In this document: positions 18,586-35,776 of the stretch, one piece after another | How positions within the stretch are numbered: position 1 is the stretch's first letter | Layout: each line of letters opens with the position of its first letter | Origin: Lepidodermella squamata | Taxonomy: Eukaryota; Animalia; Gastrotricha | Length of the DNA: 64,000 nt | Direction of reading: 5' to 3' | Assembly: GCA_047495785.1 (NCBI GenBank) | Contig: JBLDXI010000002.1 | Coordinates: forward strand, 1,984,001-2,048,000 | Notes under the pieces: model-generated | The model's input: the letters and a program-made list of their open reading frames with translations, nothing else | Databases searched by the model: none | Told to the model about the DNA's origin: nothing | Program-made: the position numbers and the translations under genes

Positions 18586-21173
18586 TCAGCAGCAAACGTG
18601 TTGAATGACTACATTCGTGTACATACTGGCTTGCTCAAGAGAATCGAAGCAAAAATCGAATTGCTGAACACTTTCAACAAAACGTGAGAGCGAGTCAAAA
18701 ATCGACTGGTCCATGCCGGGCTGCATTGCCTTCGCTGTCATCCAGCAATCCGGAGCACTTTGGCAGTAATCGACGCAATCACAACGCGATGCCAAATTCG
18801 TCGTAACAGCGCCCGGGTTGCGAAGAACCGCGACAAACGCGAATTTGTCCACCGCCTTCACCACCCTGTTAACAGTCAGCCACATTTTGTTCTGATTGAA
18901 CTGGCCTGACTGCTCCTGTTTCCCGATTGTCTCAACAATGGCCGTCATCGGAGGGTCGCCGTCGAACATGGGCATTTTCTGGATTTTTCGGCGACTTATC
19001 ACCTTGTGATGCAGCCACTCGTGGTAAGTGTTGATACGATGCGGTACGATGTCCTTCCCTTTTCTGTCCTTCTTAGCCATGGTCATCTCGTTAACAGCCA
19101 CCCCAACCTCGACAGCCCGTTCGATAAGCATCCGGCACCACTGCCGGCTTTTCTTGTCGCTCGCCTTGAAATGCGCCGAGTAGTAGCCGCAGTTTCCCAA
19201 CAAGTGGAAATAGCCCACCAGGATTTCGCGCATCAATTCTTTGGAGAAGGCGTGGACACCTTGATCGAGGTCAGCACCTTCCAGCGTGTTGAGACACTCG
19301 AAGGTAACACGGCGTCGGTTGCTTACAATCGCAGCTTCTTCGTGTTGTTTCGCGAAAATCAACGACAATAGCAAGTCGTAGTCGCCCATGTCGAGGAAAA
19401 CTGCGATTGTGTGGTGCTTGTTCTGGTCGTAATGCCTGCCTTCCAGCGCATCTCCAAACTTTTCCAACAATTGGGGCGGGAGCTGAAAAATAAAATCGGA
19501 ATATAGGAATTGTTATAAATGTGAGCAAAGTAAACATAGATAATAGTAACTATCTATAATAAATATTATAAACAGATAGTTACTATTATCTATGAAAGTG
19601 AAGCTCAAATAGCTTGGTTTTTTTCATGCTCCCAACACTTCGTTTGCACGAGCCTGTCAATTCAAAAATGTAAGGTCTGAAAAGTATAATTTTGACCTTT
19701 TGGCGCAATAGCCTATCACTATCGAAATCTGTTTTTTCACCTAATATATTTCAAAGAATTATTCCGGAAATTTAATGTAAATTGGCAATTCATGAATTCA
19801 TGCTTCATAATGATCAAACTTCCAAAATTAAAAAATTAGATTCATCACATAAAATCCTTGGCTTTTAAAAATTCAAAGCACACGCTAAAAGAAACTTCGC
19901 GATGACTCTGTGAGCGGTCGTCTTATAGATCATCATTCCTACCAGTTCCATCGTTCCGTACCAAGAACTCGGTCAAAGACCAAAGGGGGAGACTTATGTC
20001 AATTTTCCTTATCCCAACAAGTTCGGCTCTCATAGAGCAAAGTAGGACCGCAGAACTGATAGTGATTACAAAATTCGACGTAAGGGCTCCCTTTGGTCTT
20101 TCACTGAGCTTAACGTACGGAGCGAGTTGTAGTTTTTGGGCTCTTTTATAACATCTTTATCTTTATCTTTCATTATAGTCGTCCACACCAGTGGGCGTTT
20201 TTTTCTCGAGCGTGACGCAATGATTTTTTCAATTTTGCACATATATTCAATAAATTTCTGATCAACTTGAAACATATTATTATTAATTGAAAACTGAGCT
20301 TCATTTTTATACAAACGAAAATTAATTAGCTTACCATGCAATAAGCCTCGCGGCAGTGAACACATCGGATAACGAATTTCACACGTTTCTCGCTGCGAAT
20401 TTTACCGCGAAAGTTGACGAAGCCTTCAATATGCGTCGAATGGAAGCACTTGGGCAAGTTCGCGGCCCTGAAGGCCTTCGGCGGGTCCTTCTCGTATTCA
20501 GGCGCGCTGGTGGTGGTGCTGGTGGATGGCTGTCCGAGGGGATACTGGATGCCCACTGCGTATGACAGCATATCCTGAGTGTTGACATCAGCGTTGTCTA
20601 GAATCGGAATTCCGTTGGAATCTTCGTCGAAATTCGGCGCTGGGATCGACGGATACAACGCTTCTAGGTCCGACGGCGAATCAGTGTAGTCCTGTTACAT
20701 ACAATTATACAATTACATACAATTTATAAGGTTCTGAAGGTGAAACTTACAGGGATAATTCCGGTGAGGCCGAACAAGTCATCGGGTGACTCGAGTGATT
20801 GCTGCTGGTCGACTGCAGGAGTTGGGGCTATATAACTCGGCGAGCTAGGATCAAAGAAGTCATCCGGTACTGGCTGCGGCGTGACCAGACTATCCCGGCT
20901 GATTTCAACAGCCATTGGCATCATCTTCGGCGGTGGAGGCATCAACGCATAGTCATCATCCATAGTGTTAGCTTTTCTTTTCACTGGCGAAGTTTGAACT
21001 GGGCCCGGTTGAATTTCCGGCTGATTGAACTGACCGTAATACTGCTGCAACTGGTCTGGGTATTGCTCGTACGAAGGCTGCCCATAAAACTGGTTTTGCT
21101 GATAGTATTCACTTTGCGGGTCGTAGAACCCGCCATATTGGTAACTCTCGAACGCTGGGTAAGCTAGACTCAT
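18586..21173 (-). CDS. Q/Y/P-rich N-terminus plus degenerate p300/CBP-type (KAT11) HAT domain, copy 1 (558 aa)
   Basis: Exons 21173-20751, 20691-20335 and 19482-18586 sum to 1677 nt. Colinear blocks resembling the p300 HAT: FRAANLPKC..HIEGFVN, NRRRVTFECLNT, MREILVGYFHLLGNCGYYSAHF, RQWCRMLIERAV, KMPMFDGD, FAFVAVL, FDSLEQASMYT. Confidence 0.75.
19535..19594. repeat. 60-bp hairpin or mini inverted-repeat element in the expanded intron 2 of HAT-like copy 1
   Basis: Perfect 21-bp arms catagataatagtaactatct / agatagttactattatctatg around an 18-bp spacer. Confidence 0.7.
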
Positions 21174-21639
21174 TTAAAAATCATAATATGAGCCAAGAAC
21201 ACGTGTACAAAATAATATCATACTGACGAGCAGCCAGCTCATCATTCATTTTACGCCAGCCCTGAATCATCTTGAAAGTGCTCGGGTGATGATAAAAAAA
21301 GCGCGTGATAAAGCATAAAAAACGTTATCGAATGAGTTGCGGGTTGTAAGCTGCAGGCCGCATTGTTAATCAGTAGACCTTGTTGAATTGGCAAAGATTC
21401 ACGTGTTTATTCATCCGACATTTCGGTTATTTGCCATAACCAGCTTCAATATACCAAAATAAAATTGATGGGCTGAATTGACGTGGGCAAAGATGTCGCT
21501 GGATTAATATGTCGTAAAATGTCTTGTACTGAGGAAATATCGCCACACAACAATAAGATTGATCAAATGTGGAATTTCACAATGAAAACATGTATTCGTA
21601 AGGCGGTAAAATAGAAGGTGAGTGAATACCTTCAAGGAT

Positions 21640-22125
21640 TCAATCAAGGAAAAACCATCCTCAGCATTCGTTCGAAAAATTGGAATAGCGATTGAAAACT
21701 AGGAAAATCAGGGATATTAGGAGCATGCTGCAAATTTCGTCGTCTTAGTCCTAGGAAGCCGAGTTGCTTGCACATCACATTCAAGAGTCATTCAAAATCT
21801 GGGTGGAGCTACGTTATCAAGTGGGTCACTTTGAAGCTGGTGTGATTCAAGTCAGATTAAAGCTGACAAGTTTTGGATCCCGATAGGCAGTTTTTCTACA
21901 GTTCATATCAGCCATTTATGGCGCCCATCTGAGCCAAGACTCTTTCGAACTGTTCGCGGTATTTTTCCGCGTTTCTCTCCATATTGAAACGCAATTCCTG
22001 CTGACTGCCACGCACGTCCTGTACGATAGCTTCGCCAGCTTGACGGTTGATATCGCCTGCGAAAACAGCAGCTCACCCTGCTGCTAGTTTATAGCGCTTT
22101 GAATGCGGCCCATGAAGTCTTGAAA
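21640..22125 (-). pseudogene. Decayed partial duplicate of the secreted-protein gene at 37867-38364 and its 3' flank
   Basis: tcagccatttatggcgccca..gagccaag.ctctttcgaactgttcgcggtatttttccgcgtttctctcca at about 21908 matches 37867 onward. It contains indels and lacks the 5' half. Confidence 0.8.
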
Positions 22126-22634
22126 GCTGAAGAGGTTTTAGGAGCCAATGGCGAATTAACGGGACACGCAGTCTTGAAAATGAATGCGAAACCACCTGTA
22201 AAAAATTCTGGTATAATGTGACAGAATTTGATGATGTTTTTTAGTCGCTGAATTGGACAAACGGAAGAAGACTTTAGCCTTGCTGCCGGGAAGTTAAGCA
22301 GATTCTACGCTCGTGGAAACATATGTTCGCCTTTGATCGAGGCTAAAATATAAACGCAGAAACACTTTTTTAAGATTAATTTTTATTAACATATTTTCCT
22401 ATATAAATAGCGTGCAGGATCACTTTTCCTTGCACTTTTCAGCTGCGTTTCTCTGAGTTTCCGGTAGACACAGAGGAGGAAAGAAATCTTGAATTCCCTC
22501 ATAATGCAGAAAAACTTTATAATTACAATACAAGAATAAAGGGAACGACCGTTCAAAGAGTAACAATCAAAAAGTCTCGACTAGTTTCATAAATCTTCGG
22601 AATGACAATAATCACAGCATATATAACCGGCTCC

Positions 22635-22859
22635 GGATGTTCGTACATATTTATGTACAGTTTTTCGACTATTCGTACATAATTATGTACAACTATTTGG
22701 CTATTCGCACATATTTTCGAATTGAACCCTATCCCTAACCCTTACCTGAATTACAATACAGCTTAATTACTTAATTACTTAATTACTTGAATGTATAGCT
22801 AATAGCCGCAAATATGTGCGAATAGACAAAAAACTGTACATAAATATGTACGAACATCC
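22635..22859. mobile_element. MITE-like inverted-repeat element with internal ccctaaccc motif
   Basis: ggatgttcgtacatatttatgtacagtttttt ... aaaaaactgtacataaatatgtacgaacatcc. The sequence atataaccggc is repeated on both sides. Confidence 0.7.
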
Positions 22860-23071
22860 ACTTCGTATATAACCGGCGTAATTTAAAAAAGCAGACAACT
22901 TTGACTTGATTTAGGCTTAACAACAATTCAACCAGTCTCAATCAAAACGTGTTGTTACAAATCTTCGGTATCACACGGACAATAATCACAATGTAACTGA
23001 TTATTATTTGAATTCCTAGTTATTTTAGGCTTGCTCGAAAATAAGAAAACAAGCGCCATTCGTTGCGGAAG

Positions 23072-23710
23072 TCAGCAGCGAACCTGATGGATGACTGCAC
23101 TCATGGAAAATATCGCTTGGTAAAGGTATTTGAAGCGAAACTCTTTTTCAAGAAAACGACGGCGCGAGTCGAAAATCGACGGGAATCGGTTGCCGGACTG
23201 CGTCGCCTCCGCCATCACGCTGCAATTCGGGGCAGTTTGGCAGTAATCGGCGCAATTGCAACGCGAGGCAAAATTCGTTTCAACAGCGCGAAGTACCACG
23301 ACAAACGCCGATTCGTCAACGGCCTTATGCAGCGCCTTGTTGAGAGACTTCCACATTTTATCCTTATTGAACTGGCGTGTCAGCCGCTCCTGGTTGTCAA
23401 TTATGTTAACAATGGTTGTCATCAGCTTGTCGCCGTGGAACAATGGCATTTTGTCGATTTGTCGGCGGCTTTTCACATATTCAAGCAGCCAGACGTCGAA
23501 ATTGAAGATACGCCGCGCCGCTTCTATGACCTTTCCTTTTTTATCCTTCTTAGCCATGGTCTGGCAGTCAACAGCCACCCCGGCCTTGATGGCCCGGTCG
23601 ACCAGCGAGCGGCACCACTGCTGGCTATCCTTGTCGCCCGCTTTGAAATGCACCGAGTAGTAGCCGCAGTTTCCCAACAAGTGAAAATAGCCCACCAGGA
23701 TTTCGCTCTC
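23072..23710 (-). pseudogene. 5'-truncated copy 2 of the p300/CBP HAT-like gene
   Basis: EILVGYFHLLGNCGYYSVHFKAGDKDSQQWCRSLVDRAI...KMPLFHGD is paralogous to copies 1 and 3. Homology stops abruptly near 23707 and is followed by sequence matching 37750-37805. Confidence 0.75.
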
Positions 23711-24065
23711 GTACATCCCATACATCAAGGGTGTTCAAAATCATATTCCGAGGGTGGCGCTAACTTTTTCAAGAGGATCACTTCGAAGCTGGTTCGAAGC
23801 TGGAAATTATTTATATTACACCGCCAAGGTTGCATTTAGACTCGGGAATATTCCAAAAAGAAAGAAAACAATGTTGCGACCTCGGGTCATTTTTATTCCG
23901 TTGGACGCTCAGCGACCTTTCGGGCGCCACGTACCCGTCATCAGGATAAAAACTGTCCTAAACCCTAAACCATGGTAAAATCTTTTTATTACAACAAAGG
24001 TTAAGTTATTAGAAATAAGAAATAAGTAATATGTAGCAATAGGTATATAGTTAGAGGAAAACTGT

Positions 24066-24266
24066 TTTCATCCGACCAATGTCTTATTTAATCTGACAAC
24101 CAAAAATGTGACTAAAACCTGCCGACTTGCTTTTTCATATATTTCATATAACTTGGATCGCCATAAATCTTTCAAAATAAAAATCGAGAAAATCGATATT
24201 TTCATGTCGGATGATTTAAGTCACATTTTTGGTTGTCAGATTAAATAAGTCATTGGTCGGATGAAA
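24066..24266. mobile_element. MITE-like inverted-repeat element
   Basis: ttttcatccgaccaatgtcttatttaatctgacaaccaaaaatgtgact ... agtcacatttttggttgtcagattaaataagtcattggtcggatgaaaa (about 50-65 bp arms). Confidence 0.75.
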
Positions 24267-24779
24267 AAAGTCACACCCTATATGAGCTGCCGATGGACAG
24301 TAACAATGAAGTAACAATATCATAAAATACAGATTTAGGCAGATTCCAATTTTAAAGCCAAATACCTATCACTGCATGGGCATAAATGGTAGAAGCATCA
24401 GTATATATTATGCAAGAATCATCAATGAAAGAAAACTTCAAACGGTCTCAATCGAAGCGTGTCTCGACCAGTTTCATAAAGCTTCGGTATCACCCTGACA
24501 ATAATCATCTAAATGGCTTCACCGGCATAACTATTTAGAAAGCAAACAAATTCCGAGTTAATTTAGGTGATTGATGCGTTAATTAATTAGTTAGGTAATT
24601 ATGCAAAAATCAATGAAAAGTCTCAATCAAAGTCTCAGTCAAAACTTATCGACCAGCTTCATAAATTTTCGGTATCAGCCGGGCAATAATCACAACGTAA
24701 CCGGCTTAATTATTTAAAACGCAAACAAATTTCGAGTTATTTTAGGCTTGCTCGACACAAGCGCAATTCGTTGTGGGAA

Positions 24780-27700
24780 TCAGCAGCAAACGTGTTGAAT
24801 GACCTCGTTCGTGCTCATTTTCGCTAGCTCAAGCTGATCGAAGCGAAAAACGAACTGCTGAGAGATTGCAGAAAAACGCGAGCACGAGTCGAAAATCGAC
24901 TGTTCCCTGCCGGGCTGCGTCGCCTTCGCCATCATGCCGCAATCCGGGGCGATTTGGCAGTAATCGACGCAATCACAACGCGACGCCAAATTCGTCGTAA
25001 CAGCGGCCGGGTTGCGAAGAACCGCGACAAACGCGAAATCATCCACCTTCTGCAACTTCGTGTTAACAGCCAGCCACATTTTGTTCTCATCGAACTGGCC
25101 TGACTTCTCCTGTTTTACAATTTTCTCAACAATGGCCGTCATCAGTTTGTCGCCGTCGAACATGGGCATTTTAGCAATGTTTCGGCGACTTATCACCTTC
25201 TCGTGCAGCCAGTCGTGGAAATTGTAGATACGATGCGGTACGATGTCCCTTCCTTTTCTGTCCTTCTTAGTCATGGTCATCTCGTTAACAGCCGCCCCAA
25301 CCTCGATAGCCCGGTCGATCAGCATTCGGCACCACTGCCGGCTTTCCTTGTCACCCGCCTTGAAATGCGCCGAGTAGTAGCCGCAGTTTCCCAACAAGTG
25401 GAAATAGCCCACCAGGATTTCGCGCATCAATTCGTCGGCGAAGGTGTGGACGCCTTGTTCGAGGTCAGCCGCTTGCAGCGTGTTGTGGCACTCGAAGGTA
25501 ACACGGCGTCGGTTGCTTACAATCGCAGCTTCTTCGTGTTGTTTCGCGAAAATCAACGACAATAGCAAATCGTAGTCGCCCATGGCGAGGAAAACTGCGA
25601 TTGTGTGGTGCTTATTTTGGTCGCGACGCCTGCCTTCCAGCGCATCTCCAAACTTTTCCAACAATTGGGGCGGAAGCTGAAAAATAAAATCCGAATTCAG
25701 GTATGGTTAAAATTGTTGGGAACACAGTTAACTTACCGTGCTGTCAGCCTCGCGGCAATGAAGACATCGGATGACGAATTTCGCCGGTATTCCCCCGCGA
25801 ATCTGACCGCGATTATTGACAAAGCCTTCAATATGCGTCGAATGGAAACACTTAGGCAACTTGGCGGCTCTGAACTTTAGCAAGTCCTTCTCGTATTCAG
25901 GCGCGCTGGTGGTGGTGCTGGTGGATGGCTGTCCCAGGGGATCCTGGATGCCCACTGCCAATGACAGCATATCCTGAGTGTTGACATCAGCGTTGTCTAG
26001 AATCGGAATTCCGTTGGAATCTTCGTCGAAATTCGGCGCTAGAATCGACGGATCTAGTCCGTCAAGGTCGGGCGGCGAATCAGTGTAGTCCTGTTACATG
26101 ACATGCTGTCATCAATGTCATCAGTGCCCATATTGCGGGCCGAAAATCCCCTGCGACTGTCACGTTTATTTTAAATTGTTTATTAAATAATTTATATTAA
26201 ATAATAATATTGTTAATCGGAATAATATAAAAATTATAACGACGTAGTTAATAGCAACGGGCAAGCTGTTTCTTTCGCGGGTTATCACCTCCATCTGTTG
26301 CAAGAGCAAGATGGTTCAACTCTCACGTCTCGTATTGCTGACATTGCATGTGCATTCTTTTACCATCTTTCCACTGTTTTAACCAATGATAGTCGCAATG
26401 ATACTTTCATTAAGAAGAATCTCATTTGTTTTAGCCTGTTAATAACATGTCTACTTGGGGCCATTCTTCGGCAGGCTTGCTGAAGCAGCTATCTACGCCT
26501 TCAACCTCAGCTACTGATGGTAGCAGCACACCTCGCATTGTTTCTGGTTAGGCTTTTTTCAGATTATTTTATAGTGGTATCAACTCAACTTACTGTGTTT
26601 CATGCTAGTTCTCAATGGTGCTTCGCCACAACCAAGATCGCCTATGCTAGCGGGTTCGCCCTTGCTTACTTCTGCTTTCGGTAATCGCTCTGGTATGACT
26701 TTTAAACTGAGTGCTTTGCTTCTTACTAGCATTTCTCACATGTGATTTATTACCAGTTCCTATTAAGAAAGCGATTCCTTCCGTTCATGCCACGCCAAAG
26801 GCTAGCTCTAGAAATTGTTAGCTTCTTATTAATTGCTTTTGATTCCATTGACTTACTTTATAATCTAGTGACCTCTGAAAACCGAGCACCTCCTGCCGTT
26901 GCTACCCCAGCGAAGGTGGCGGTGAAACGGCCACTAGAAGATGACGCTGCGAAAGCAATTCATAGTCTCAGTAAGTATTAGCATTTTTGGAAGTAATGTC
27001 TAATTGCAGCTGTTGTTTGATAGAAACTCAACTCACTGCTGAAAAGCGGAAGTATGAGATTGCTCGGGCGCAAGTGCTACGCCTTAAGAAATTTGCTCCG
27101 AATGGGCGGCATGTTGGCCATTTGACTGCCGAGAAAGCTCAACTTCCTTTGGCTCAGTTGTCTCGGCAGAAGAGGTCTCTGAGGCATCGGAGTGAATTGA
27201 TTCGACCAATTCAGTCGATCTTCGATGATGTACAAAGCCGCGGCGATTTCTATCCTGTGAAATCATTGTCTGTCCAGGTTTGACTAAAATTAAATCATTG
27301 CCAGATTGAAGAGAATTAATGTGTCTCATGTGTTCCTTCTAGGTCAATTTCGATGGTGGAATACCAGCGAGGAAGTTATGGTTTGGCGATGCCGATGCTA
27401 AAGCTAATACCCTGCGCGAGTAAGTTGCTGATATTTTTTAAATGCTATTATTATATTCTTTTCCCTGTCAACTTCAGTGTGATGCGCGATTATTCCTCTC
27501 GCTACCTCTCGGTTAAAGATGCCTTGCGCCAATGCAATACCTCCTGGTGCCAGATTACTCAGCGAGAGTTCTTGGCTGAAAAGAAGAAGCTTGGCTCTAT
27601 CCTGCCGATTAGCGTGGTGGTTCCGCCAGAAAGGGATGTAACCGATGAGGTCGAAGGTTTTAGCAATGCTGCGTTCATCCTGCCCAGCAAGCAGATGCCT

Positions 27701-30700
27701 TATCTCTTCCGAAACGGAATTGTTCCTCGACCTAACACCAACACAGTAGTCTGCCGAGTACAAGGTATTATTCATAATTTCAATAGTTGCCGACTTTTCA
27801 TTGGCTATATAATCTTTGATGAGCCCTTTAAGCTTTCTTAAATGTCTCTCATCTTGAATATGTCGGTTTTTCTAGGTGATGGTACCGTCTTTCGAACTGG
27901 GAAAGATCCTCATTATCGAATGAATTTCGCCTTTCATCATCAGAAGACGCGTGTTACTACAAAAACCGAATATCTGGCTGCTGTTTTGATGGGCAAGGAG
28001 ACTCGTCACAACTTGGAGCTCCTCTCGCCTGTCTTCGCTGATTTCAACGCCATAAAAGTGAACGGTGTTCTTCTTGATGATGGCACTAAGTTAACCGTTA
28101 AATTGTAAGCAAAAATTTTGGCTTTTATGGCAATATTTATCTGAGAATTTTGCGGACAGGTCTCTATGCGCCGACCTGCCTGCCATCTGCAAAATCGTTG
28201 GCACGAGCTATACCGATGCTCTAGCCTGTCCGTTCTGCACCTTCAATTTCGTTGATGATGCCAAGCCTCTGGATGTCCTCATCACAGAGCTGGACCGGAA
28301 ACCAAAGCGACCCTTGCCTGATTCGCTACTCGATGTCGACAGCGATGACATCTATCTATGCACGCTGCATGCTGCTCTGAGAATCGCGTTTCTTTTTTTA
28401 CGAGCCGTGAGTAGAAAATGAAGTCCTTTCAGCTTATTTACCTCACATTTACCTAATTTTTTAGTTATTCCTCTTCATGAAAAAAGAAATCGAAGATTAT
28501 GAATCGAAAATTGTCTGCCTTTTGCGATCGTTCGATAAAAAGGCTGAAATCGCGTTCGTGAAAGAGGACATCGCCGTGCACCACATGAATCACCACACTC
28601 TTTTCAAGGTGGTTTTCGACTCGGAGGAGTCTTGGTGTCCTCTTCAACTGTGCCGGGGAGGCTGGGAGGCTAAATATCTTCTTGCTTCGTTCGGCCGCGC
28701 CAAGAAGCCTCTCATCAATTTCTTAGTCTCGAAAAATGTTATATTCGACAAGAAGTCCAGCCCGGCGGACTTGGCTCAGCTCTGCGTCGATGCTGGCATG
28801 CTAAATTCGCTGGAACCTAGTTCCATGCAAACGAAGTTGGTGCAATTTGGCGAGGCAAAAGCTCTCTTCAAGCAGCTTTTCGCTGTCATTCGCTGTGGCG
28901 ACGGCTCCAAGCCAATCCCCGAGACACCCGCCGATTTCCATGACTTTGCCAACATTCTTCGACGACTAAGTGGATGCTATACTCCTTACCTCCACATCTT
29001 CCAGTTCCATTCGCACGATCGTCTGGCGAGGCTGAGGCAGGAGGGCACTTATCTGTCGGCTATATCGGGCGATAACGTCGAGCTCTCGAACAAGGTCGGC
29101 AAAAACCAGTTGTCGAACCAGGTATGCCGCGTCAACAACGACGAAAGTCAGCAGCTGATGAGGCTCTACAACATCCAGCTGGCTACTCTGGCGACTCGAG
29201 TCGAGGACGACGTAGCCGAAGGCAGGGCAGCGGTGATCTTCACTGCAGACGATTCTGTGGAACCGTTTGATTTCACCTGCGATGGTGATATGTGATATAT
29301 TTGTTTCTGTCATTGTTATATATTTAATATAGCCGTCTTAATATTTCATCTTTTTCCTGATTATTTTCTTTCATCTGCGATGGCGCTGTAATTGTTATTA
29401 TGATTCGCCAATTATATTGATATCAAATCTTGGGATATTATACGTGTGTTTCCACGACTGTATGATAATTATTTGTGGTCTTAACTAGTCCCACTAAACG
29501 ATGCTAATCGATGCTGGGCAATAAATTTATGTAAAGCCGCCTTAATGATTTGCTCTCTCTGAGGATACGTCTTGCAAATCACGTTAATTGTGCTTTCATA
29601 TAATATTTATACTGTATATTACTTCGCCGCTTTTCAAGAAAGATGGTCAATCATTCTGTCCCTAAATAAGTTAGCAATATTACTTTGATTTCTTTGATTT
29701 TATTTATGACATTCTCAGCCGCCAGCCGCCTTAATGATTTGGGGTCTAACCCGTCCTACCTATATGTCGATAATTTATGGCCGTATATAGGCACCTTGAT
29801 ATTTTTTAATAATTCCTATGCCCTTCTATGAGCTCGTCTTTGATAACCAATTCTTGTGCTCGAGCAGAAAATTGCGCGTTTTATTATGTTATAACCACCA
29901 TATTCTCGCATCGACTGGTTTCATTGATAAATGCTTTCCGATTTCCTACGAATTAGCATTTTAGCTCGGCTATCGTAAAGCAACCTCGTTTTTTGTGAAA
30001 TTATTCGACACGTTAAAATTGATATTAATAATTTTATGAGCTCTATATCATTGAATCCTCCGATCAAAACTCAGCTCTTTCTCAGCCTTTCTGTTAATAT
30101 AATTCCTGCCTAGAATCCAATTGCTGCTTTTGTTTGATGTTTCGAGGTCAAAATCATCAGGCACCGCTATTAACTACTTCCCAATTTATTCCAAAAAGGG
30201 AACAAATAAAAGCAGGCCAATCATGCGTTTTTATTTCGTATTTTACGAATATTAATCCGAAAGTACAATATTGCGATGAAGCAACGATTGCGATGAAGAG
30301 CATTATTAAACATGAAGCATCGAGAAAATCAGAAAATCAGAAAATCAAAAGTATCACTTCTTAAAAAGTCGCTTAGGTTTCGGCGCTGGTTGTATTTTGC
30401 CCATGTTCGAGCAAAACAGACGAAACAAAATACGGCGTTCCTGCTTGGCAGCACCGCTGTTGCGATTGTGATCGGGGTCAAGGCGGTATCGATTGCTCAT
30501 AAGCACGCGAGGCTCGAGATCGTAATAGGCCGCCACCTCCTCGTCGGTTGTAGGTGTTTTCGGGTGGATGCGATGATCGGGATGCTGAAATATAAAATAA
30601 CAGAGCCAATTAAAAAATTTAGAGTGAATTTAGAGTGAAATTACCTCTTCAACCTTTTTGCATGGCGACTTTTGGCGATCAGCTACAACGCGGGGCTGTC

Positions 30701-33700
30701 GCCGTTGCTTGGGGGTACTGGGAGGCGCCTTCAGTTTTCGCTCCATTATGTCAACTTTACGACGGGGACGCTTATTAGACACCGAAGACATAACGTCGAT
30801 ATAGATATGTAAATAAAATGAGGAGATTCTAAAATAAATAAAAAACAGATTTCAGACTCGAACTGAATTGAGACGAATAATAGCCTTGCAAATGGCCTGA
30901 GGCGAGTTTTCAATTATGGGTTTTTTCATAGAGAAAGATACATTATTAACAAGGCTGGTTCTAGTGTTTCTTTTCAGAGCGAAAAGCGAGACGACAATAT
31001 CGAAACGACGGAATATCTCTGCAAGATGTTCGGCCGAAATGCGAATGTAGCGCTTTTTCTCGCTACAAAATTCACAAATTTTAATCGTAATCGCGCATTA
31101 GTCACCGTTTACCCACCTTTTAAAAATTTCCTGCTGAGCCAACTTACCTGCGGGAAAAACGCAATGACGGGCTACGACCTTGAGCTGATTCAGCATTGGC
31201 TTAGCTGCATCGCGGTTGAGCTGGGTTTCGAGTGCTAAAACCACTTGATTGGCCAGGAATAGCATCTCTTTTCGGCGATCAAAAACAGCGAAAGGATCGA
31301 ACAGCTGGAGTTCAAGGACGCGAACGAGCCGCACTTGTTGCTGTTTCTTTAAGTAATCGTCGACGCGCCGAAATTCAGTCACGGCAGAGCCATAAATCAC
31401 AGGCTTCTTCAAAGTTGCGCGCTCCCGCAAACAATAGGCCATAATTAAGGTGGATAATCAACAACAACTAAGGATGAAAAAGATACTTATAAAAATATTT
31501 ATTAAGGCGTCTAATTAACGCAATAGATAAATCGGAACAGGAGTCGAAGCGAGCGCAACAACGAATTTATAAAAAAATTGGGCGCGCAACTTAGGTAATT
31601 TGGTTGATAAAATGAGCGCATTTAGCGAGCGGATAGGAAATATCAAGCGTTTTGGCGCATGGGCCTACAAATACGCGCAAGCGCAATTCAATTAAACGAG
31701 ATCTGAGGCGCGGAAAGCGAGAGAATTAATAATACTGCTTGGACCGCGCACGTATAGCAGTAACTCTTCGCGAAGCGATGTATTAATCTACAATCGAAAA
31801 ACGAGGGCAATGATTTCGACAATGAGTCGAAGCTGATTGGCGTATAATTTTAATATATTATTGCTACTACAAAACAGCCGGCGCCTAACAGGTGTAAATG
31901 GCGGCGATGATTCCGCTGCTATGATAGCGGTGATTATAGATCAAACACCTAGTCAACCTTTTGATTCGGCTAAATAACACCGCTGTTTGATAAGTAAACA
32001 GGCGCGTTACAATCCATCCCTAGCGCGCACGCAAACACAAGTAGATGCACGCACGAACACGAACAGGTGCGCTCGGGCCTCGAAACCAAAATTCGACCAC
32101 GGAAAACCACGGAAAGGTGTGAAAAAAGTAAGAACAATGCAGCTGGTTGACGCTGACAATAAGGCGTGAATTGAAATGAATAGAAGATGTGTGTGGCTAT
32201 ACAATAGCTATTCTACAGATCGCGCACAACAGCACTCGCTCACGCCGTAGCTGTTCCAGGTGTCAATCGATGATAAAATCATGTGTTGCTATTCTCGTCC
32301 CGAAATTGAATTGAAAAAAACGAAGTACACGTGAAAATAGGAAAATTATTCTTTCAATCGCAATTTTGAAAAAATGCCAAGAACGCCTGAGCAATTGCTT
32401 GAACACAAAATTAGAATGCGAGTGTATCGCGCTAACCGCTCTGCTGAGAAAATAGCCGCGGATCAAGAACGCGATAGACTGCGAAAAGCGGCATTAACTG
32501 CCGCTACTGTAGAATCTGCGGAAAAGCGAGCGGCGGCAACAAAGCGAGGTTTGTTATAAAAATTACGTGTTTCAAATTATATTTTCTTTTTATCATTTTC
32601 AGCATTGGGTGATCAACCCGTTGTGACGTATATCGACGAAGATGACATTATTGACTGGGAGCAGCGGCCGGCTGTAAATTATAGCACTTGGGACCCGTTA
32701 CCTCGATTTCAACTAGCTGGATGTACAATTTCTCTAAAACCTTGTGATAACGCTGTCAGGCCAAAAAACACTCGTGAAATGAATAAAATAAACAATAATT
32801 GAGATAGATTGGTGCTTTTTCCTTCTGGTTGTAGACGTGTAATATAGAACAAAAATCAAACGAAAATACCATCGTATATTTATTTTGCAGCTAGGGTGAA
32901 ACTGGCGAGTCTTGAACAATTTAACAAAATTACAACACATCCACATTTTTCGTGAGGGCAAGTTTCAACATTACTCGCATTTGAAATCAAAATCACACAT
33001 GAAGAGAGGCGCACATAATCAATTCAGAACCTTCAATATTGACAAGGATTTTTTCATTTTTCACAGCTAATAATAAGCCGAAGAACGCTTTCGAAACGTT
33101 TTTACGATCTAAATTATTCACGACGTCATTGAAGCTGAGATTATTCGAGGCAACAAGGGAAGATAATTGATTATAGAAAAAGCGATCGCTATCATCGTCA
33201 AGTCGTAATAAACTGTGAAAAATGTGCGAGCCAGCCGGAAACAAAGATTCATCATACGGTTGTACGCTAACAGACTCAATCTCAGTTTGTACCTCGGTGG
33301 CCTCAACAGCATCGGCCGTGGCTGAATTTTCACCATTATCGGGAAGACTCGGCATGAATGACGGTATAGATCTTTTCGCAACGGGAGCGAACCTTTGTAA
33401 AATTGAAGCAGCCGGTCGTTTCCGAGAATTTAGTTCGGAAATAGGTACAGTTGATGTCGGCGGTTCATGAGGCAAATCGATAGGAGCAGCTCCGACTTGA
33501 ATAACTGGAACTGGCACCAGAGTCGCAGGAATGTTGTCAGATACAACGCAGCCTGAAAAAATTAAGTAGGATTAAATAAGTCACTAAATAAATTAATTTA
33601 ATTTACCCTGAGGCCAGCTTTGATCAGTTGTGAGATAACTAACAGGCTGAGGAGCTGAACTGGGAGGTAACGGATTCCGAAAACCTGAATAACGAATAAT

Positions 33701-35776
33701 AAAATTATGAATATAAAACAGCGACTGGTTCAACTTACTAGGAATGAACAGAACGTTCTCGTCTTTTCCAGTGCTGGCCGGGCGGATGACTACTGCAGTA
33801 ATAAATACAATCACGAAAAAAATTGGTGAATAAAACAATTACCAGGCTCGTCGAACTTGGGTATATCCTCCGCCTTGGTTAAGAAAATCGGCAAATCTAC
33901 AATAATTGAAAGGTGGTAGTTATACACGAAATCTATTCATCACTTGTTACCTAAGGCACCAAAAAGCGTCTTCTGAAGACGATTGCAGACCTTGATGCTG
34001 GGTTGTCTGATAAGTTGAAGGGCGGGGACAAGGCGGTCTGACAGAAGACTGCCAACACGTTCGGTTCCTTTTGACCTCGTCGTGTGAAATTCCGTGTAGA
34101 ATGGGTCAAGTTCAATCTCCTTCTCAAAGAAGGTGAGGGTTGTTGATGGCTGGAGAGGCTTCGACTCGAAGGCAGTTCGCTCATCCCATGCGAGGACTTC
34201 GTGAATAGTAAGCAGAGGTTCAGTCTTGAGTTTCATCTCTGCAAGAAGTTGGTTAAAAGGAAAAGCAGGAATAGCTGCAGCCTCGAAGATGGTCAAACCA
34301 AAGCCGTCATCAATAATCGGTTCTGCATCAATAGGGGCGATCGGATTTTCAGCCACGGAAGTCATGTCAGGGGTCAACCGAGGTAGCATTTCAAGCGGCT
34401 AAATAATTACCAAAGAATTAGGTGAACAATTCATAACTGCGAGCTTACCATATGCGAGGCAATAGCGTCAGAAATATCCGCACAACCAAGCTGAACAAGA
34501 GCGGTCGCCAGATAGGTGTTCGTATCGGGACGCTCCGCTCTCCGTCTAGACATATCTACTTGTAAAATGCACGAAGCATCATTAGCATCGTGAAACAGCC
34601 TGTCAATTTTCAGGCTGTAAGTGACACTAAGAGAATAAATTAACTGGCCTGAGGTTCGCAAGTCAAGATTTGGCAACGATTCGGCGCATTCACAGAGGGC
34701 CTTGATGTCGACATTGGCGATCAGGGAAGGCTCGATCGGCTGCTTAGCAATGGACTTGCGAAACACACGCCCGCGTAGGAACAATTCGAGTGAACTCATC
34801 ATCGCAATAAGTTAATATCTATGGGTAGAAGCAATACATGCGAAGGTAATGAGAACCAGCAAACTACAGCGTATGATCGATGTTGGCAGGCTTTAGCTAG
34901 GGCTTGATCGGAGAAGGGAGAAATAGGTCATCGATGATCGCTGTCCTATACTCATCCTGAAGCATTCGACAGCCGCTATTTGTCAACCAACCCTGTTTTT
35001 AAATGGAATGATCAAGACAGACTCGAACAAGAATGCACATGCACCCTCAGCAATAGTAGACGGCAGACGTGAGAGTTAAACCCTCTTGGAACAGCTGGAG
35101 ACGATAAACCGCGAAAGGACCAGCAACCCCGCAGCCCCGCAGCCCCGTTGCTATCAACGTCGCTAATTAATTTTTTTTATATTATTCCGATTAACAATAT
35201 TATTATTTAATATAAAATATTTAATAAACAATTCAAAATAAACGTGACAGTCGCAGGGGATTTTCGGCCCGCAATATGGGCACTGATGACATTGATGACA
35301 GCATGGAAATTGCAATTTTAATCTCAAACAGATTCAACGATGGTGAAACTAACAGGGATAATTCCGGTGACGCCGAGCAAGTCATCGGGTGACTCGAGTG
35401 ATTGCTGCTGGTCGACTGCAGGAGTTGGGGCTATATAACTCGGCGAGGTGGGATCGAAGAAGTCTTCTGGCACTGGCTGCGGCGTGACCAGACTATCCCG
35501 GCTGAATTCAACAGTTATCGGCATCATCTTTGGAGGTGGAGGCATCAACGCGTAGTCGTCATCCATCTCGTAAGCTTGTCTTGTCATTGGCGAAAATTGA
35601 ACTTGACCCGGTTGAATTTCTGGCTGGTTGTACTGGCCGTACGGCTGCAGCTGGTACGGATATTGCGCATACGAAGGCTGCCCATAAAACTGGCCTTGCG
35701 GGTTGTAGTACTCACTTCGTGGGTCATAGAACCCGTCACATTGATAACTTTCGAGCTCGGGGTGAGCTCTACTCAT
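24780..35776 (-). CDS. p300/CBP HAT-like gene copy 3 (557 aa); intron 1 interrupted by the 9.2-kb transposon
   Basis: Exons 35776-35354, 26090-25737 and 25676-24780 sum to 1674 nt, and each is a clear paralog of the matching copy 1 exon. Intron 1 is 59 bp in copy 1 and about 9.26 kb here. Confidence 0.8.
26102..26360 (+). repeat. Left terminal inverted repeat (core about 26102-26232)
   Basis: Inverted match to about 35030-35305. Confidence 0.9.
26447..29295 (+). CDS. DDE transposase of the RAG1/Transib/Chapaev-related group (10 exons, 756 aa)
   Basis: Exons 26447-26546, 26609-26692, 26757-26816, 26869-26970, 27024-27277, 27343-27419, 27478-27764, 27876-28104, 28160-28406 and 28465-29295 total 2271 nt in an open frame. 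Motifs VCRVQGDG (D1), LMGKETRHNL, LCADL (D2), CPFC, CTLH, YTPYLHIFQFH and SGDNVELSNK (E). Confidence 0.82.
30354..30791 (-). CDS. Transposon cargo: small basic protein (125 aa, 2 exons)
   Basis: Exons 30791-30645 and 30584-30354 in frame: MSSVSNKRPRRKVD...STPKQRR...KSPCKK...PKPKRLFKK. Confidence 0.55.
30852..31442 (-). CDS. Transposon cargo: uncharacterised protein (178 aa, 2 exons)
   Basis: Exons 31442-31117 and 31062-30852 join in frame over a 54-bp GT-AG intron. Starts MAYCLRERATLKKPVIYG. Confidence 0.5.
32374..32802 (+). CDS. Transposon cargo: small charged helical protein (124 aa, 2 exons)
   Basis: Exons 32374-32548 and 32603-32802 in frame: MPRTPEQLLEHKIRMRVYRANRSAEKIAADQERDRLRKAA... 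Confidence 0.55.
32993..34802 (-). CDS. Transposon cargo: Rad21/Rec8-like alpha-kleisin, cohesin subunit (6 exons, 515 aa)
   Basis: Exons 34802-34449, 34398-33951, 33896-33843, 33792-33739, 33684-33607 and 33552-32993 total 1548 nt in an open frame. N-terminal LDLRTSGQLIYSLSVTYSLKIDRLFHDANDA resembles Rad21 [31 protein letters not shown]. C-terminal LSFNDVVNNLDRKNVSKAFFGLLLAVK resembles the kleisin winged-helix NRKQAAAKFYSFLVLKK. Confidence 0.82.
35030..35305 (-). repeat. Right terminal inverted repeat (core about 35172-35305)
   Basis: ...cgtgacagtcgcaggggattttcggcccgcaatatgggcactgatgacattgatgacagcatg. Confidence 0.9.

What the first reader, a model, noticed from the sequence alone, without database searches (positions are those of the whole stretch)
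26102..35305. RAG1/Transib-like transposon carrying its own cohesin kleisin (Rad21/Rec8-like) gene
Seen: a TIR-bounded 9.2-kb element, absent from the paralogous intron, with an intact spliced transposase on + and an intact spliced 515-aa gene on -, arranged tail-to-tail with three small ORFs between them. The second gene has the kleisin N-terminal motif (LRTSGQLIYSL...Y..K...L..D) and the C-terminal winged-helix motif (RKNVSKAFFGLL). A central block (FEKEIELD...LIRQPSIKVCNRLQKTLF) resembles the Rad21 SA/STAG-binding region (VDSVKELD...LFSLPAQPLWNNRLLKLF). Known: kleisins bridge SMC3 and SMC1 to close the cohesin ring; ProtoRAG carries RAG2L convergent to RAG1L. I know of no DNA transposon described with a kleisin cargo. 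Inference: the element may co-opt cohesin, for example to hold sister chromatids so excision gaps are repaired from an element-bearing sister, to synapse its ends, or to bias segregation in the germline.
Basis: partly seen in the sequence, partly recalled or inferred. Interest (0 to 1): 0.95.

Follow-up and report, generated by a model that had tools for sequence, protein, structure and literature searches.

The report
Jumping gene carrying a kleisin gene
A young 9.2-kb cut-and-paste transposon in a small-intron animal genome carries, besides its transposase, an intact, transcribed and spliced gene for a very divergent cohesin-type kleisin (the strap that closes SMC rings), a cargo kept by both diverged subfamilies of the element and described in no paper I could find.

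Summary
Window 26102-35305 is a 9,204-bp DNA transposon with 132-nt, 98% complementary terminal inverted repeats (TIRs), CA..TG termini and a 2-bp target-site duplication (TSD). It sits in a host intron that is about 58 nt in the paralogue.

The genome holds 3 near-identical copies of this subfamily (A) and 6 of a second, B. B shares 88% TIR identity and about 53% transposase identity with A. All lie at different sites.

Every copy carries, opposite the transposase, a 515-aa, six-exon kleisin gene. One copy has an internal deletion, and one is split by a nested sister element. An RNA-like contig confirms all five GT-AG introns.

- The N-terminus passes Pfam Rad21_Rec8_N (hhalign 92%).
- The C-terminus is a winged helix whose best structural matches are RAD21-C and ScpA-C.

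Between A and B, synonymous sites are saturated in both genes but amino-acid changes are not, so the cargo is old and selected.

The transposase has the D..D..C(2)C..H(4)H..E pattern of the EnSpm/Mirage/Chapaev/Transib/RAG1 clade. It is not a Transib: the TSD is 2 bp and no HMM matches.

SMC binding and any use of cohesin remain untested inference.

The scan had already found this family on other copies in this genome.

The parts
26102..26233 (+). Left terminal inverted repeat (5'-CATGCTGTCATC...). Weaker complementarity continues to about 26360.
   Evidence: 132 nt, 98% complementary. 88% identical to the subfamily B TIR.
35174..35305 (-). Right terminal inverted repeat.
26100..26101 (.). 2-bp target-site duplication GA, repeated at 35306-35307.
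   Evidence: 7 of 9 copies in the genome have a perfect 2-bp TSD of varied sequence.
26447..29295 (+). Transposase gene, 775 aa in the inferred nine-exon model. Exons: 26447-26546, 26609-26741, 26801-26970, 27024-27277, 27343-27419, 27478-27764, 27876-28104, 28160-28406, 28465-29295. Candidate catalytic residues: D in RVQGDGTVF, D in CADLPA, then CPFC, HIFQFH, and E in GDNVE.
   Evidence: GT-AG junctions; intron positions and motifs conserved in subfamily B. The N-terminal three exons are uncertain. Run X1 holds 37% of its sampled words.
32993..34802 (-). Kleisin-like gene, 515 aa, six exons: 34449-34802, 33951-34398, 33843-33896, 33739-33792, 33607-33684, 32993-33552.
   Evidence: The spliced 1,450-nt contig of run X1 removes all five introns.
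34449..34802 (-). Kleisin N-terminal helical domain (exon 1). In canonical kleisins this is the SMC3-neck-binding part.
   Evidence: Pfam Rad21_Rec8_N 25.6-25.7 bits, cut-off 23.1. hhalign against a Rad21 family N-terminal profile: 92%, E 6.7e-7. 54% identical to subfamily B, with LRT.GQLIY...RLFHDAND conserved.
32993..33259 (-). Kleisin C-terminal winged-helix domain plus stop codon. In canonical kleisins this is the SMC1-head-binding part.
30852..31442 (-). Small gene M1 (inferred, 178 aa). Exons 31117-31442 and 30852-31062, with a 54-nt GT-AG intron. No known family.
   Evidence: 96% aa identity to B, pN/pS 0.11. A distant homologue lies next to a related transposase in contig L058. No Pfam or atlas hit.
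30354..30791 (-). Small gene M2 (inferred, 125 aa, basic N-terminus). Exons 30645-30791 and 30354-30584, with a 60-nt intron.
   Evidence: 89% aa identity to B, pN/pS 0.22. No Pfam hit.
26091..35353 (-). Host intron (gene on the minus strand) that contains the element. It is about 58 nt in the paralogue at window 20700-20736.
   Evidence: flank alignment to the paralogue.

Best explanation
Shown: this is an autonomous, recently active cut-and-paste DNA transposon of the EnSpm/Mirage/Chapaev/Transib (CMCT, RAG1-related) clade. It has CA..TG ends, 2-bp TSDs and a DDE transposase with C(2)C and H(4)H zinc motifs. On the opposite strand it carries a very divergent alpha-kleisin (Rad21/Rec8 type) and two small orphan genes. 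The kleisin is a long-standing, selected part of the element, not a passenger picked up once.

Inferred: the protein keeps exactly the two ends by which kleisins clasp an SMC dimer. These are the N-terminal helical domain for the SMC3 neck and the C-terminal winged helix for the SMC1 head. The element encodes no SMC of its own. The most likely mechanism is therefore that the protein closes host SMC1-SMC3 rings into an element-specific cohesin. Its divergent linker has no ExxR site and no detectable SA-binding block, so it could couple to the transposase or M1/M2 instead of the usual regulators.

Such a complex could serve transposition in two ways. It could hold the sister chromatid at the donor site, so the excision gap is repaired from an element-bearing copy. 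Or it could bring the two ends, 9 kb apart, together.
For: Mobility:
- TIRs, TSDs, an empty paralogous site and 9 copies at unrelated sites. Identity is 99.97-100% within subfamily A and 99.7-99.98% within B. One B copy has a second B copy inserted into its own kleisin gene.

Cargo status:
- Every transposase-bearing copy has the kleisin.
- A and B are collinear.
- In A versus B, the kleisin has pS 0.68-0.82 and pN 0.35-0.45; the transposase has pS 0.72-0.86 and pN 0.19-0.32. Both ORFs and their splice sites have survived divergence that saturates silent sites.
- Among B copies, SNPs are 9 synonymous to 1 nonsynonymous in the transposase and 2 to 0 in the kleisin.

Expression:
- A spliced contig in run X1 lacks all five introns. 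The genome holds no intronless copy.

Kleisin identity:
- Pfam N domain is above cut-off.
- hhalign gives 92% for the N domain and 74.5% for the C domain, each at the homologous terminal position.
- A DDGFG motif is shared with the host Rad21.
- The C-terminal model is a winged helix. RAD21-C, ScpA-C and Scc1-C are among the best matches.
- The most conserved A/B stretches are those two end domains.

Host partners:
- SMC1 and SMC3 are present in the genome.

Transposase class:
- Motifs are conserved in A and B. The clade definition comes from PMC12730594. RAG1-domain clusters appear among language-model neighbours.
Against: - No test here shows binding to SMC1 or SMC3. The complex prediction gave no verdict.
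- The N domain lacks the near-invariant MFY...WLAAHW start of Rad21. Its Pfam match covers only profile positions 30-91.
- The C domain is below the Pfam cut-off. Its AF2 alignment was seeded with Rad21 sequences, so the model leans towards that fold. Generic winged-helix proteins score nearly as well.
- No relative of this kleisin was found outside this genome.
- Within-B evidence for selection on the kleisin alone rests on two SNPs.
- Tissue and timing of expression are unknown, and run X1 is only guessed to be RNA.
- The transposase has no HMM-level link to any described superfamily.
Confidence: 0.55

Rival explanations
1. The protein is kleisin-derived but no longer works with SMC proteins. 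It serves as an adaptor or regulator of the transpososome, the role RAG2 plays for RAG1, TnpA for CACTA, or the Myb-like protein for Harbinger. For example, its two ends could bridge two transposase protomers or tether them to chromatin.
For: - It is very divergent: 19-25% identity to Rad21 N domains.
- The conserved N-terminal signature is lost, and there is no ExxR.
- No SA-binding block is detectable.
- Its convergent position opposite the transposase matches ProtoRAG's layout (own knowledge).
- Winged helices are generic interaction and DNA-binding modules.
Against: - The parts best conserved between subfamilies are the two that bind SMC heads in all kleisins.
- A new partner would be expected to reshape them.
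- No evidence links it to the transposase.
Confidence: 0.2
2. The kleisin is a selfish antagonist rather than a helper. By competing with host Rad21/Rec8 for SMC1-SMC3, it perturbs cohesion, loop structure or meiotic segregation in the germline. That would favour the element through silencing escape, altered repair choice or drive.
For: - It has intact SMC-binding ends but an unrecognisable regulatory linker without ExxR.
- Kleisin identity is known to dictate cohesin behaviour (PMC10497282, title and abstract only).
Against: - A dominant-negative kleisin should be costly to the host, yet nine copies persist.
- Nothing here speaks to phenotype.
- Expression level in X1 cannot be ranked from contigs.
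Confidence: 0.12
3. The kleisin is a neutral or host-serving passenger. It was captured once from a host gene, as in Pack-MULE style transduplication, and rides along without any role for the element.
For: - DNA transposons do capture host fragments (own knowledge).
- One A copy has lost the middle of the gene, and one B copy is disrupted.
Against: - It is present and intact, with conserved exon structure, in two subfamilies whose silent sites are saturated. pN is well below pS.
- It is spliced and transcribed.
- No close host parent exists. Host kleisins are no closer to it than those of other phyla.
- The two broken copies are single recent events.
Confidence: 0.06

Closest known systems
CMCT clade of DNA transposons (EnSpm/CACTA, Mirage, Chapaev, Transib; RAG1 derives from Transib), as defined in PMC12730594
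   Same: [quoted passage not shown]
- 5'-CA..TG-3' termini and a TSD within the clade's 2-5 bp range.
- More than one gene per element, as in CACTA.
- From my own knowledge, a 2-bp TSD is what Repbase lists for Mirage.
   Different: - No detectable HMM or BLAST similarity to any described member. Only three short fragments turned up among 1.84 billion representatives.
- Termini are CATGCTG, not CACTA or CACNNTG.
- The cargo is a kleisin plus two orphan genes.
ProtoRAG / RAG1-RAG2 (own knowledge)
   Same: - A RAG1-type zinc-motif DDE enzyme sits convergent with a second gene inside the TIRs.
- Language-model neighbours include RAG1 ZnH2, ZnC2 and RNase H clusters.
   Different: - The partner is a kleisin, not a kelch/PHD RAG2.
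- The TSD is 2 bp, not 5 bp, and there is no heptamer-like end.
- No Pfam RAG1 domain is hit.
Alpha-kleisins Rad21/Scc1, Rec8, Rad21L, COH-3/4
   Same: - N-terminal helical domain (Pfam above cut-off), DDGFG motif and C-terminal winged helix, in the canonical order.
- Similar length: 515 aa against 506-536 aa for two host paralogues.
   Different: - It is encoded inside a transposon and is only 19-25% identical in the N domain.
- It lacks the MFY...WLAAHW start.
- It has no ExxR and no detectable SA/Scc3-binding block.
- No orthologue was found in any database searched.
Fungal DNA transposons carrying TET/JBP dioxygenase genes (PMC12730594)
   Same: Cut-and-paste elements, some from the same CMCT clade, that keep a chromatin-acting host-type gene as cargo across families.
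   Different: - That cargo is an enzyme acting on DNA methylation; here it is a structural SMC-ring subunit.
- The hosts are fungi; here the host is an animal.
Condensin I assisting the PiggyMac domesticated transposase in Paramecium (bioRxiv 10.1101/2025.10.03.680307; title and abstract only)
   Same: An SMC-kleisin complex is functionally coupled to a transposase-type DNA cleavage reaction.
   Different: There the host supplies a dedicated condensin to a domesticated enzyme. Here a mobile element carries the kleisin itself.

Membership tests
Alpha-kleisin (Rad21/Rec8) | N-terminal Rad21_Rec8_N helical domain | tested here: met
   - Pfam PF04825: 25.6-25.7 bits against a 23.1 cut-off, profile positions 30-91 of 110.
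- Subfamily B scores 26.4 bits.
- hhalign against 19 Rad21 N domains: 92%, E 6.7e-7.
- The first helix is poorly conserved.
Alpha-kleisin (Rad21/Rec8) | C-terminal winged-helix domain (Rad21_Rec8) at the extreme C-terminus | tested here: inconclusive
   - Pfam PF04824: 14.7-14.9 bits, below the 22.7 cut-off.
- hhalign: 74.5%, E 2.7e-5, at the homologous position.
- Taken together this favours membership.
Alpha-kleisin (Rad21/Rec8) | Bridges the SMC3 neck and SMC1 head | not testable with these tools
   The complex prediction of the kleisin N domain with three pieces of host SMC3 gave no verdict. This is not evidence either way.
Alpha-kleisin (Rad21/Rec8) | Central SA/Scc3-binding region and separase ExxR sites (typical of mitotic Rad21, not of all kleisins) | tested here: not met
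   - hhalign of the central exon against full-length Rad21 proteins finds only the DDGFG motif (18%, E 0.0013), not the SA region.
- There is no ExxR, only two DxxR, at residues 83 and 450.
CMCT clade transposase (EnSpm/Mirage/Chapaev/Transib/RAG1) | [quoted passage not shown] | tested here: met
   GDGT, CADLPA followed 18 residues later by CP(F/C)C, HIFQFH and NVE are conserved between subfamilies A and B. The definition comes from PMC12730594. Catalytic roles are inferred from the pattern only.
CMCT clade transposase (EnSpm/Mirage/Chapaev/Transib/RAG1) | 5'-CA..TG-3' termini and 2-5-bp TSD | tested here: met
   CATG...CATG termini and 2-bp TSDs in 7 of 9 copies.
Transib / RAG1 proper | 5-bp TSD, CACNNTG-type ends, and sequence similarity to Transib or RAG1 core domains | tested here: not met
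   - The TSD is 2 bp and the ends read CATGCTG.
- No Pfam RAG1 domain is hit.
- No PDB sequence hit, including with a profile.
- Only language-model neighbours at 0.90-0.92, which is a lead only.
- The fold of the last exon was unusable at pLDDT 48.8.

The most novel reading that the evidence does not exclude
A mobile element encodes its own kleisin to convert the host's SMC1-SMC3 into a transposon-specific cohesin. That cohesin would work at the element, through sister-templated repair of the excision gap or loop-extrusion synapsis of its ends. This would be a new class of transposon accessory factor and the first SMC-ring subunit known to be carried by a eukaryotic transposon.
Probability: 0.35. 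Interest if true: 0.92.

Novelty: new variant of a known kind. Interest (0 to 1): 0.8.

Why it matters
Cut-and-paste transposons gain copies only if excision is timed and repaired so that the donor copy is restored. How elements bias this is largely unknown. A transposon that has kept a cohesin-type kleisin across deep divergence suggests that some elements manipulate SMC complexes directly.

That makes several questions testable with a natural system:
- Can a foreign kleisin re-purpose host SMC1/3?
- Is cohesin or loop extrusion used for end synapsis or sister-templated repair?
- What can a kleisin do without separase and SA motifs?

The finding also adds a very divergent, apparently orphan branch to the RAG1-related transposase clade. 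Its convergent partner gene echoes the RAG1-RAG2 layout.

Tried and rejected
- Complex prediction of the kleisin N domain with three pieces of host SMC3: no verdict (score 0.21, mark 0.34). Chains were folded without alignments. I do not count it either way.
- AF2 of the transposase last exon with a 5-sequence alignment: pLDDT 48.8, so I did not search with it.
- Pfam on all transposase exons, and PDB sequence searches with single exons and a profile: nothing.
- HMMER profile of the transposase last exon against 1.84 billion representatives: only three fragments, P0001-P0003. Their contigs are too short to show whether a kleisin is linked. One of them, L058, does carry an M1 homologue.
- Two metagenome scans: one 1.8-kb contig only.
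- Word-index searches with kleisin N and C alignments: no hits. The length window limits this.
- Atlas and Pfam for M1 and M2: nothing.
- Subterminal repeat search: no transposase-binding repeat array.
- A first automatic exon-chaining attempt gave a wrong transposase model. I replaced it with junction-by-junction analysis.
- I did not build a tree of element and host kleisins. At 19-25% identity over about 100 alignable residues it would not be informative.
- Organism identity was not determined. Host Rad21 best named hits are protostome animals at 30-37% identity.

Full report
**1. The element**

The interval 26102-35305 is bounded by inverted repeats of 132 nt at 98% complementarity. Weaker complementarity reaches about 260 nt. 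The ends read CATGCTGTC...GACAGCATG, and the dinucleotide GA is duplicated on both sides.

A search of the window's own 121-Mb assembly with the left end finds three copies of this 9.2-kb form, which I call subfamily A:
- C2, the copy in this window.
- C21, which is full length and differs at 3 bases.
- C24, which has a 1.08-kb internal deletion.

It also finds six copies of a 9.45-kb sister form, subfamily B, whose TIR is 88% identical. Flanks differ at every site. Seven of nine copies have a perfect 2-bp duplication of varied sequence: GA, CC, TC, TA, GG, GT, AA.

On C32 one B copy sits inside another. Removing the inner copy and its AA duplication restores a 9,453-bp element. B copies differ from each other by only 2-32 bases.

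In this window the element lies in an intron of a minus-strand host gene. The tandem paralogue at 20700-20736 has the same flanks joined across a roughly 58-nt intron.

This is therefore a real, recently mobile cut-and-paste transposon. It is not two independent elements bracketing a host gene.

**2. The kleisin gene**

A 1,450-nt contig from public run X1 matches the minus strand without mismatch and skips five segments of 50-54 nt. Each segment has GT..AG on the minus strand. The tool only guesses that X1 is RNA.

Joining the six exons gives one open frame of 515 aa, from ATG 34802 to the stop at 32993, with an in-frame stop just upstream. The genome holds no intronless copy. The spliced form is therefore RNA-derived.

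Evidence that the protein is a kleisin:
- Exon 1 passes the Pfam gathering threshold for Rad21_Rec8_N: 25.6 bits against 23.1.
- The last exon hits Rad21_Rec8 below threshold: 14.9 bits against 22.7.
- Profile-profile comparison of the A+B alignments with alignments of host and animal Rad21 proteins gives 92% (E 6.7e-7) for the N domain and 74.5% (E 2.7e-5) for the C domain. Each aligns at the homologous terminal position.
- A DDGFG motif after the N domain is shared with host Rad21 paralogues.
- An AF2 model of the last 88 residues (pLDDT 72.6, about 85 in the core) has winged-helix topology.
- Foldseek ranks RAD21 in human cohesin, RAD21-C on SMC1A, ScpA-C on Smc and Scc1-C among the best matches. 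E-values are weak, from 2.5e-3.

Caveats:
- The model's alignment contained Rad21 sequences.
- There is no ExxR motif.
- The MFY...WLAAHW start of Rad21 is missing.

**3. Cargo or accident**

All nine transposase-bearing copies carry the gene. The only defects are the C24 deletion and the nested insertion on C32.

A and B are collinear over their whole length. Between them, synonymous differences are saturated in both genes:
- Kleisin: pS 0.68-0.82, pN 0.35-0.45.
- Transposase: pS 0.72-0.86, pN 0.19-0.32.

A 515-aa frame with five splice sites cannot survive such divergence without selection. The similar depth in both genes shows they have travelled together.

Among the six B copies, SNPs are 9 synonymous to 1 nonsynonymous in the transposase and 2 to 0 in the kleisin. 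The non-coding remainder holds 30. This is clear purifying selection on the transposase. For the kleisin it is only suggestive.

The best-conserved kleisin segments are the helical core of the N domain and the RK.VSKAFFGLLLAVKN helix of the C domain.

The host has three other alpha-kleisins, on C33, C21 and C18, scoring 75-128 bits. None is close to the element's protein.

**4. The transposase**

Junction analysis and A/B conservation give a nine-exon, 775-aa model. The first three exons are uncertain.

These motifs are conserved in A and B:
- RVQGDGT(V/I)FRTGK.
- S(L/I)CADLPAI, followed 18 residues later by CP(F/C)C.
- RRLSGCYTPYLHIFQFH.
- AISG(D/E)NVE.

Kojima (PMC12730594) states that EnSpm, Mirage, Chapaev, Transib and RAG1 share exactly these motifs, mostly CA..TG termini, and 2-5-bp TSDs. 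The element fits that clade.

It does not fit Transib or RAG1 specifically:
- The TSD is 2 bp and the ends are CATGCTG.
- There are no Pfam hits and no PDB sequence hits.
- A profile search of 1.84 billion representatives returns only three short fragments from two other samples.
- Language-model neighbours include RAG1 ZnH2, ZnC2 and RNase H clusters at 0.90-0.92. This is a lead only.
- The fold of the last exon was too uncertain to use.

Run X1 holds 37% of the transposase words, which is weak evidence of transcription.

**5. Other genes**

The region between the two large genes contains conserved minus-strand coding segments. With 54- and 60-nt GT-AG introns they assemble into M1 (178 aa) and M2 (125 aa). 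No family matches either gene.

This 1.2-kb block is 86% identical between A and B, with pS of only 0.14-0.25. It was therefore exchanged between subfamilies long after they split.

A distant M1 homologue lies just downstream of a related transposase on contig L058, from another sample. M1 is therefore also an old component.

**6. Mechanism**

Shown: an active transposon keeps a transcribed kleisin-type gene under selection.

Inferred: the protein retains both SMC-head-binding ends, and the element has no SMC gene. Host SMC1 (C21) and SMC3 (C34, C28) exist. The protein therefore most likely closes host SMC1-SMC3 rings.

What that complex does for the element is conjecture. The options are sister-templated repair of the excision gap, synapsis of ends 9 kb apart, or interference with host cohesin.

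The single complex prediction gave no verdict and is not used.

**7. Known or new**

Three full-text searches combining kleisin, Rad21 or Rec8 with transposon terms found no description of a transposon-borne kleisin.

Earlier notes of this scan report the same family on other copies in this genome, with follow-ups reaching the same reading. I re-derived the shared points independently:
- the nested copy;
- the deleted copy;
- the spliced transcript;
- the absence of ExxR;
- the 2-bp TSD.

- the A-versus-B and within-B selection analysis;
- the profile-profile and fold evidence for both kleisin ends;
- the negative test of the SA block;
- the M1 and M2 gene models and the evidence for their recent exchange;
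- the external M1-transposase linkage.

Noticed in passing
window 30300-31500; L026 4700-5800: The M1/M2 block is far less diverged between subfamilies A and B than the flanking transposase and kleisin. It is 86% nt identical with pS 0.14-0.25, against pS 0.68-0.86 for the flanking genes. This implies recent recombination or gene conversion between co-resident subfamilies. Partial extra copies exist at C24:1941388-1942088, C32:1023086-1023397 and C1:4918647-4919109.
   Followed up: partly
window 18586-25970 and 35324-35776: The host gene interrupted by the element belongs to a tandem family; the paralogue lies at about 19106-21191. The insertion expands a roughly 58-nt intron to 9.26 kb in a genome whose introns are about 50 nt. 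This may impair splicing of that copy.
   Followed up: partly
window 32374-32559 (+): A 61-aa plus-strand ORF between M1 and the kleisin is about 51% conserved at protein level in subfamily B. One of the three differences between the C2 and C21 copies, at 32385, lies in it. It may be a fifth small gene or a regulatory region.
   Followed up: no
G000 C29:3023718-3023805 and 3031997-3032084 (L032): Two identical solo TIR ends lie in the same orientation 8.3 kb apart, with identical flanks. They are relics inside a segmental duplication, not an element.
   Followed up: yes
G000 C15:1543542-1543840 (L054): An isolated 279-bp relic of the kleisin central exon, 81% nt identical to subfamily A. It is the remnant of an older copy.
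   Followed up: yes
G000 C34:1328320-1334555 and C28:388008-393848: Host SMC3 is present twice, with identical domain scores. The two could be homeologous or allelic contigs or a recent duplication. Host Rad21-like L034 (C33) is a single 536-aa intronless ORF, unlike the multi-exon paralogue on C21.
   Followed up: no
L058 (Logan SRR21620664 contig, 3,766 nt), L056, L057, L059: The only relatives of the transposase in public collections are short contigs from two or three other samples, at 40-50% aa identity. L058 also carries an M1-like gene in the same relative position. The family exists outside this genome but is very rare in current data.
   Followed up: partly
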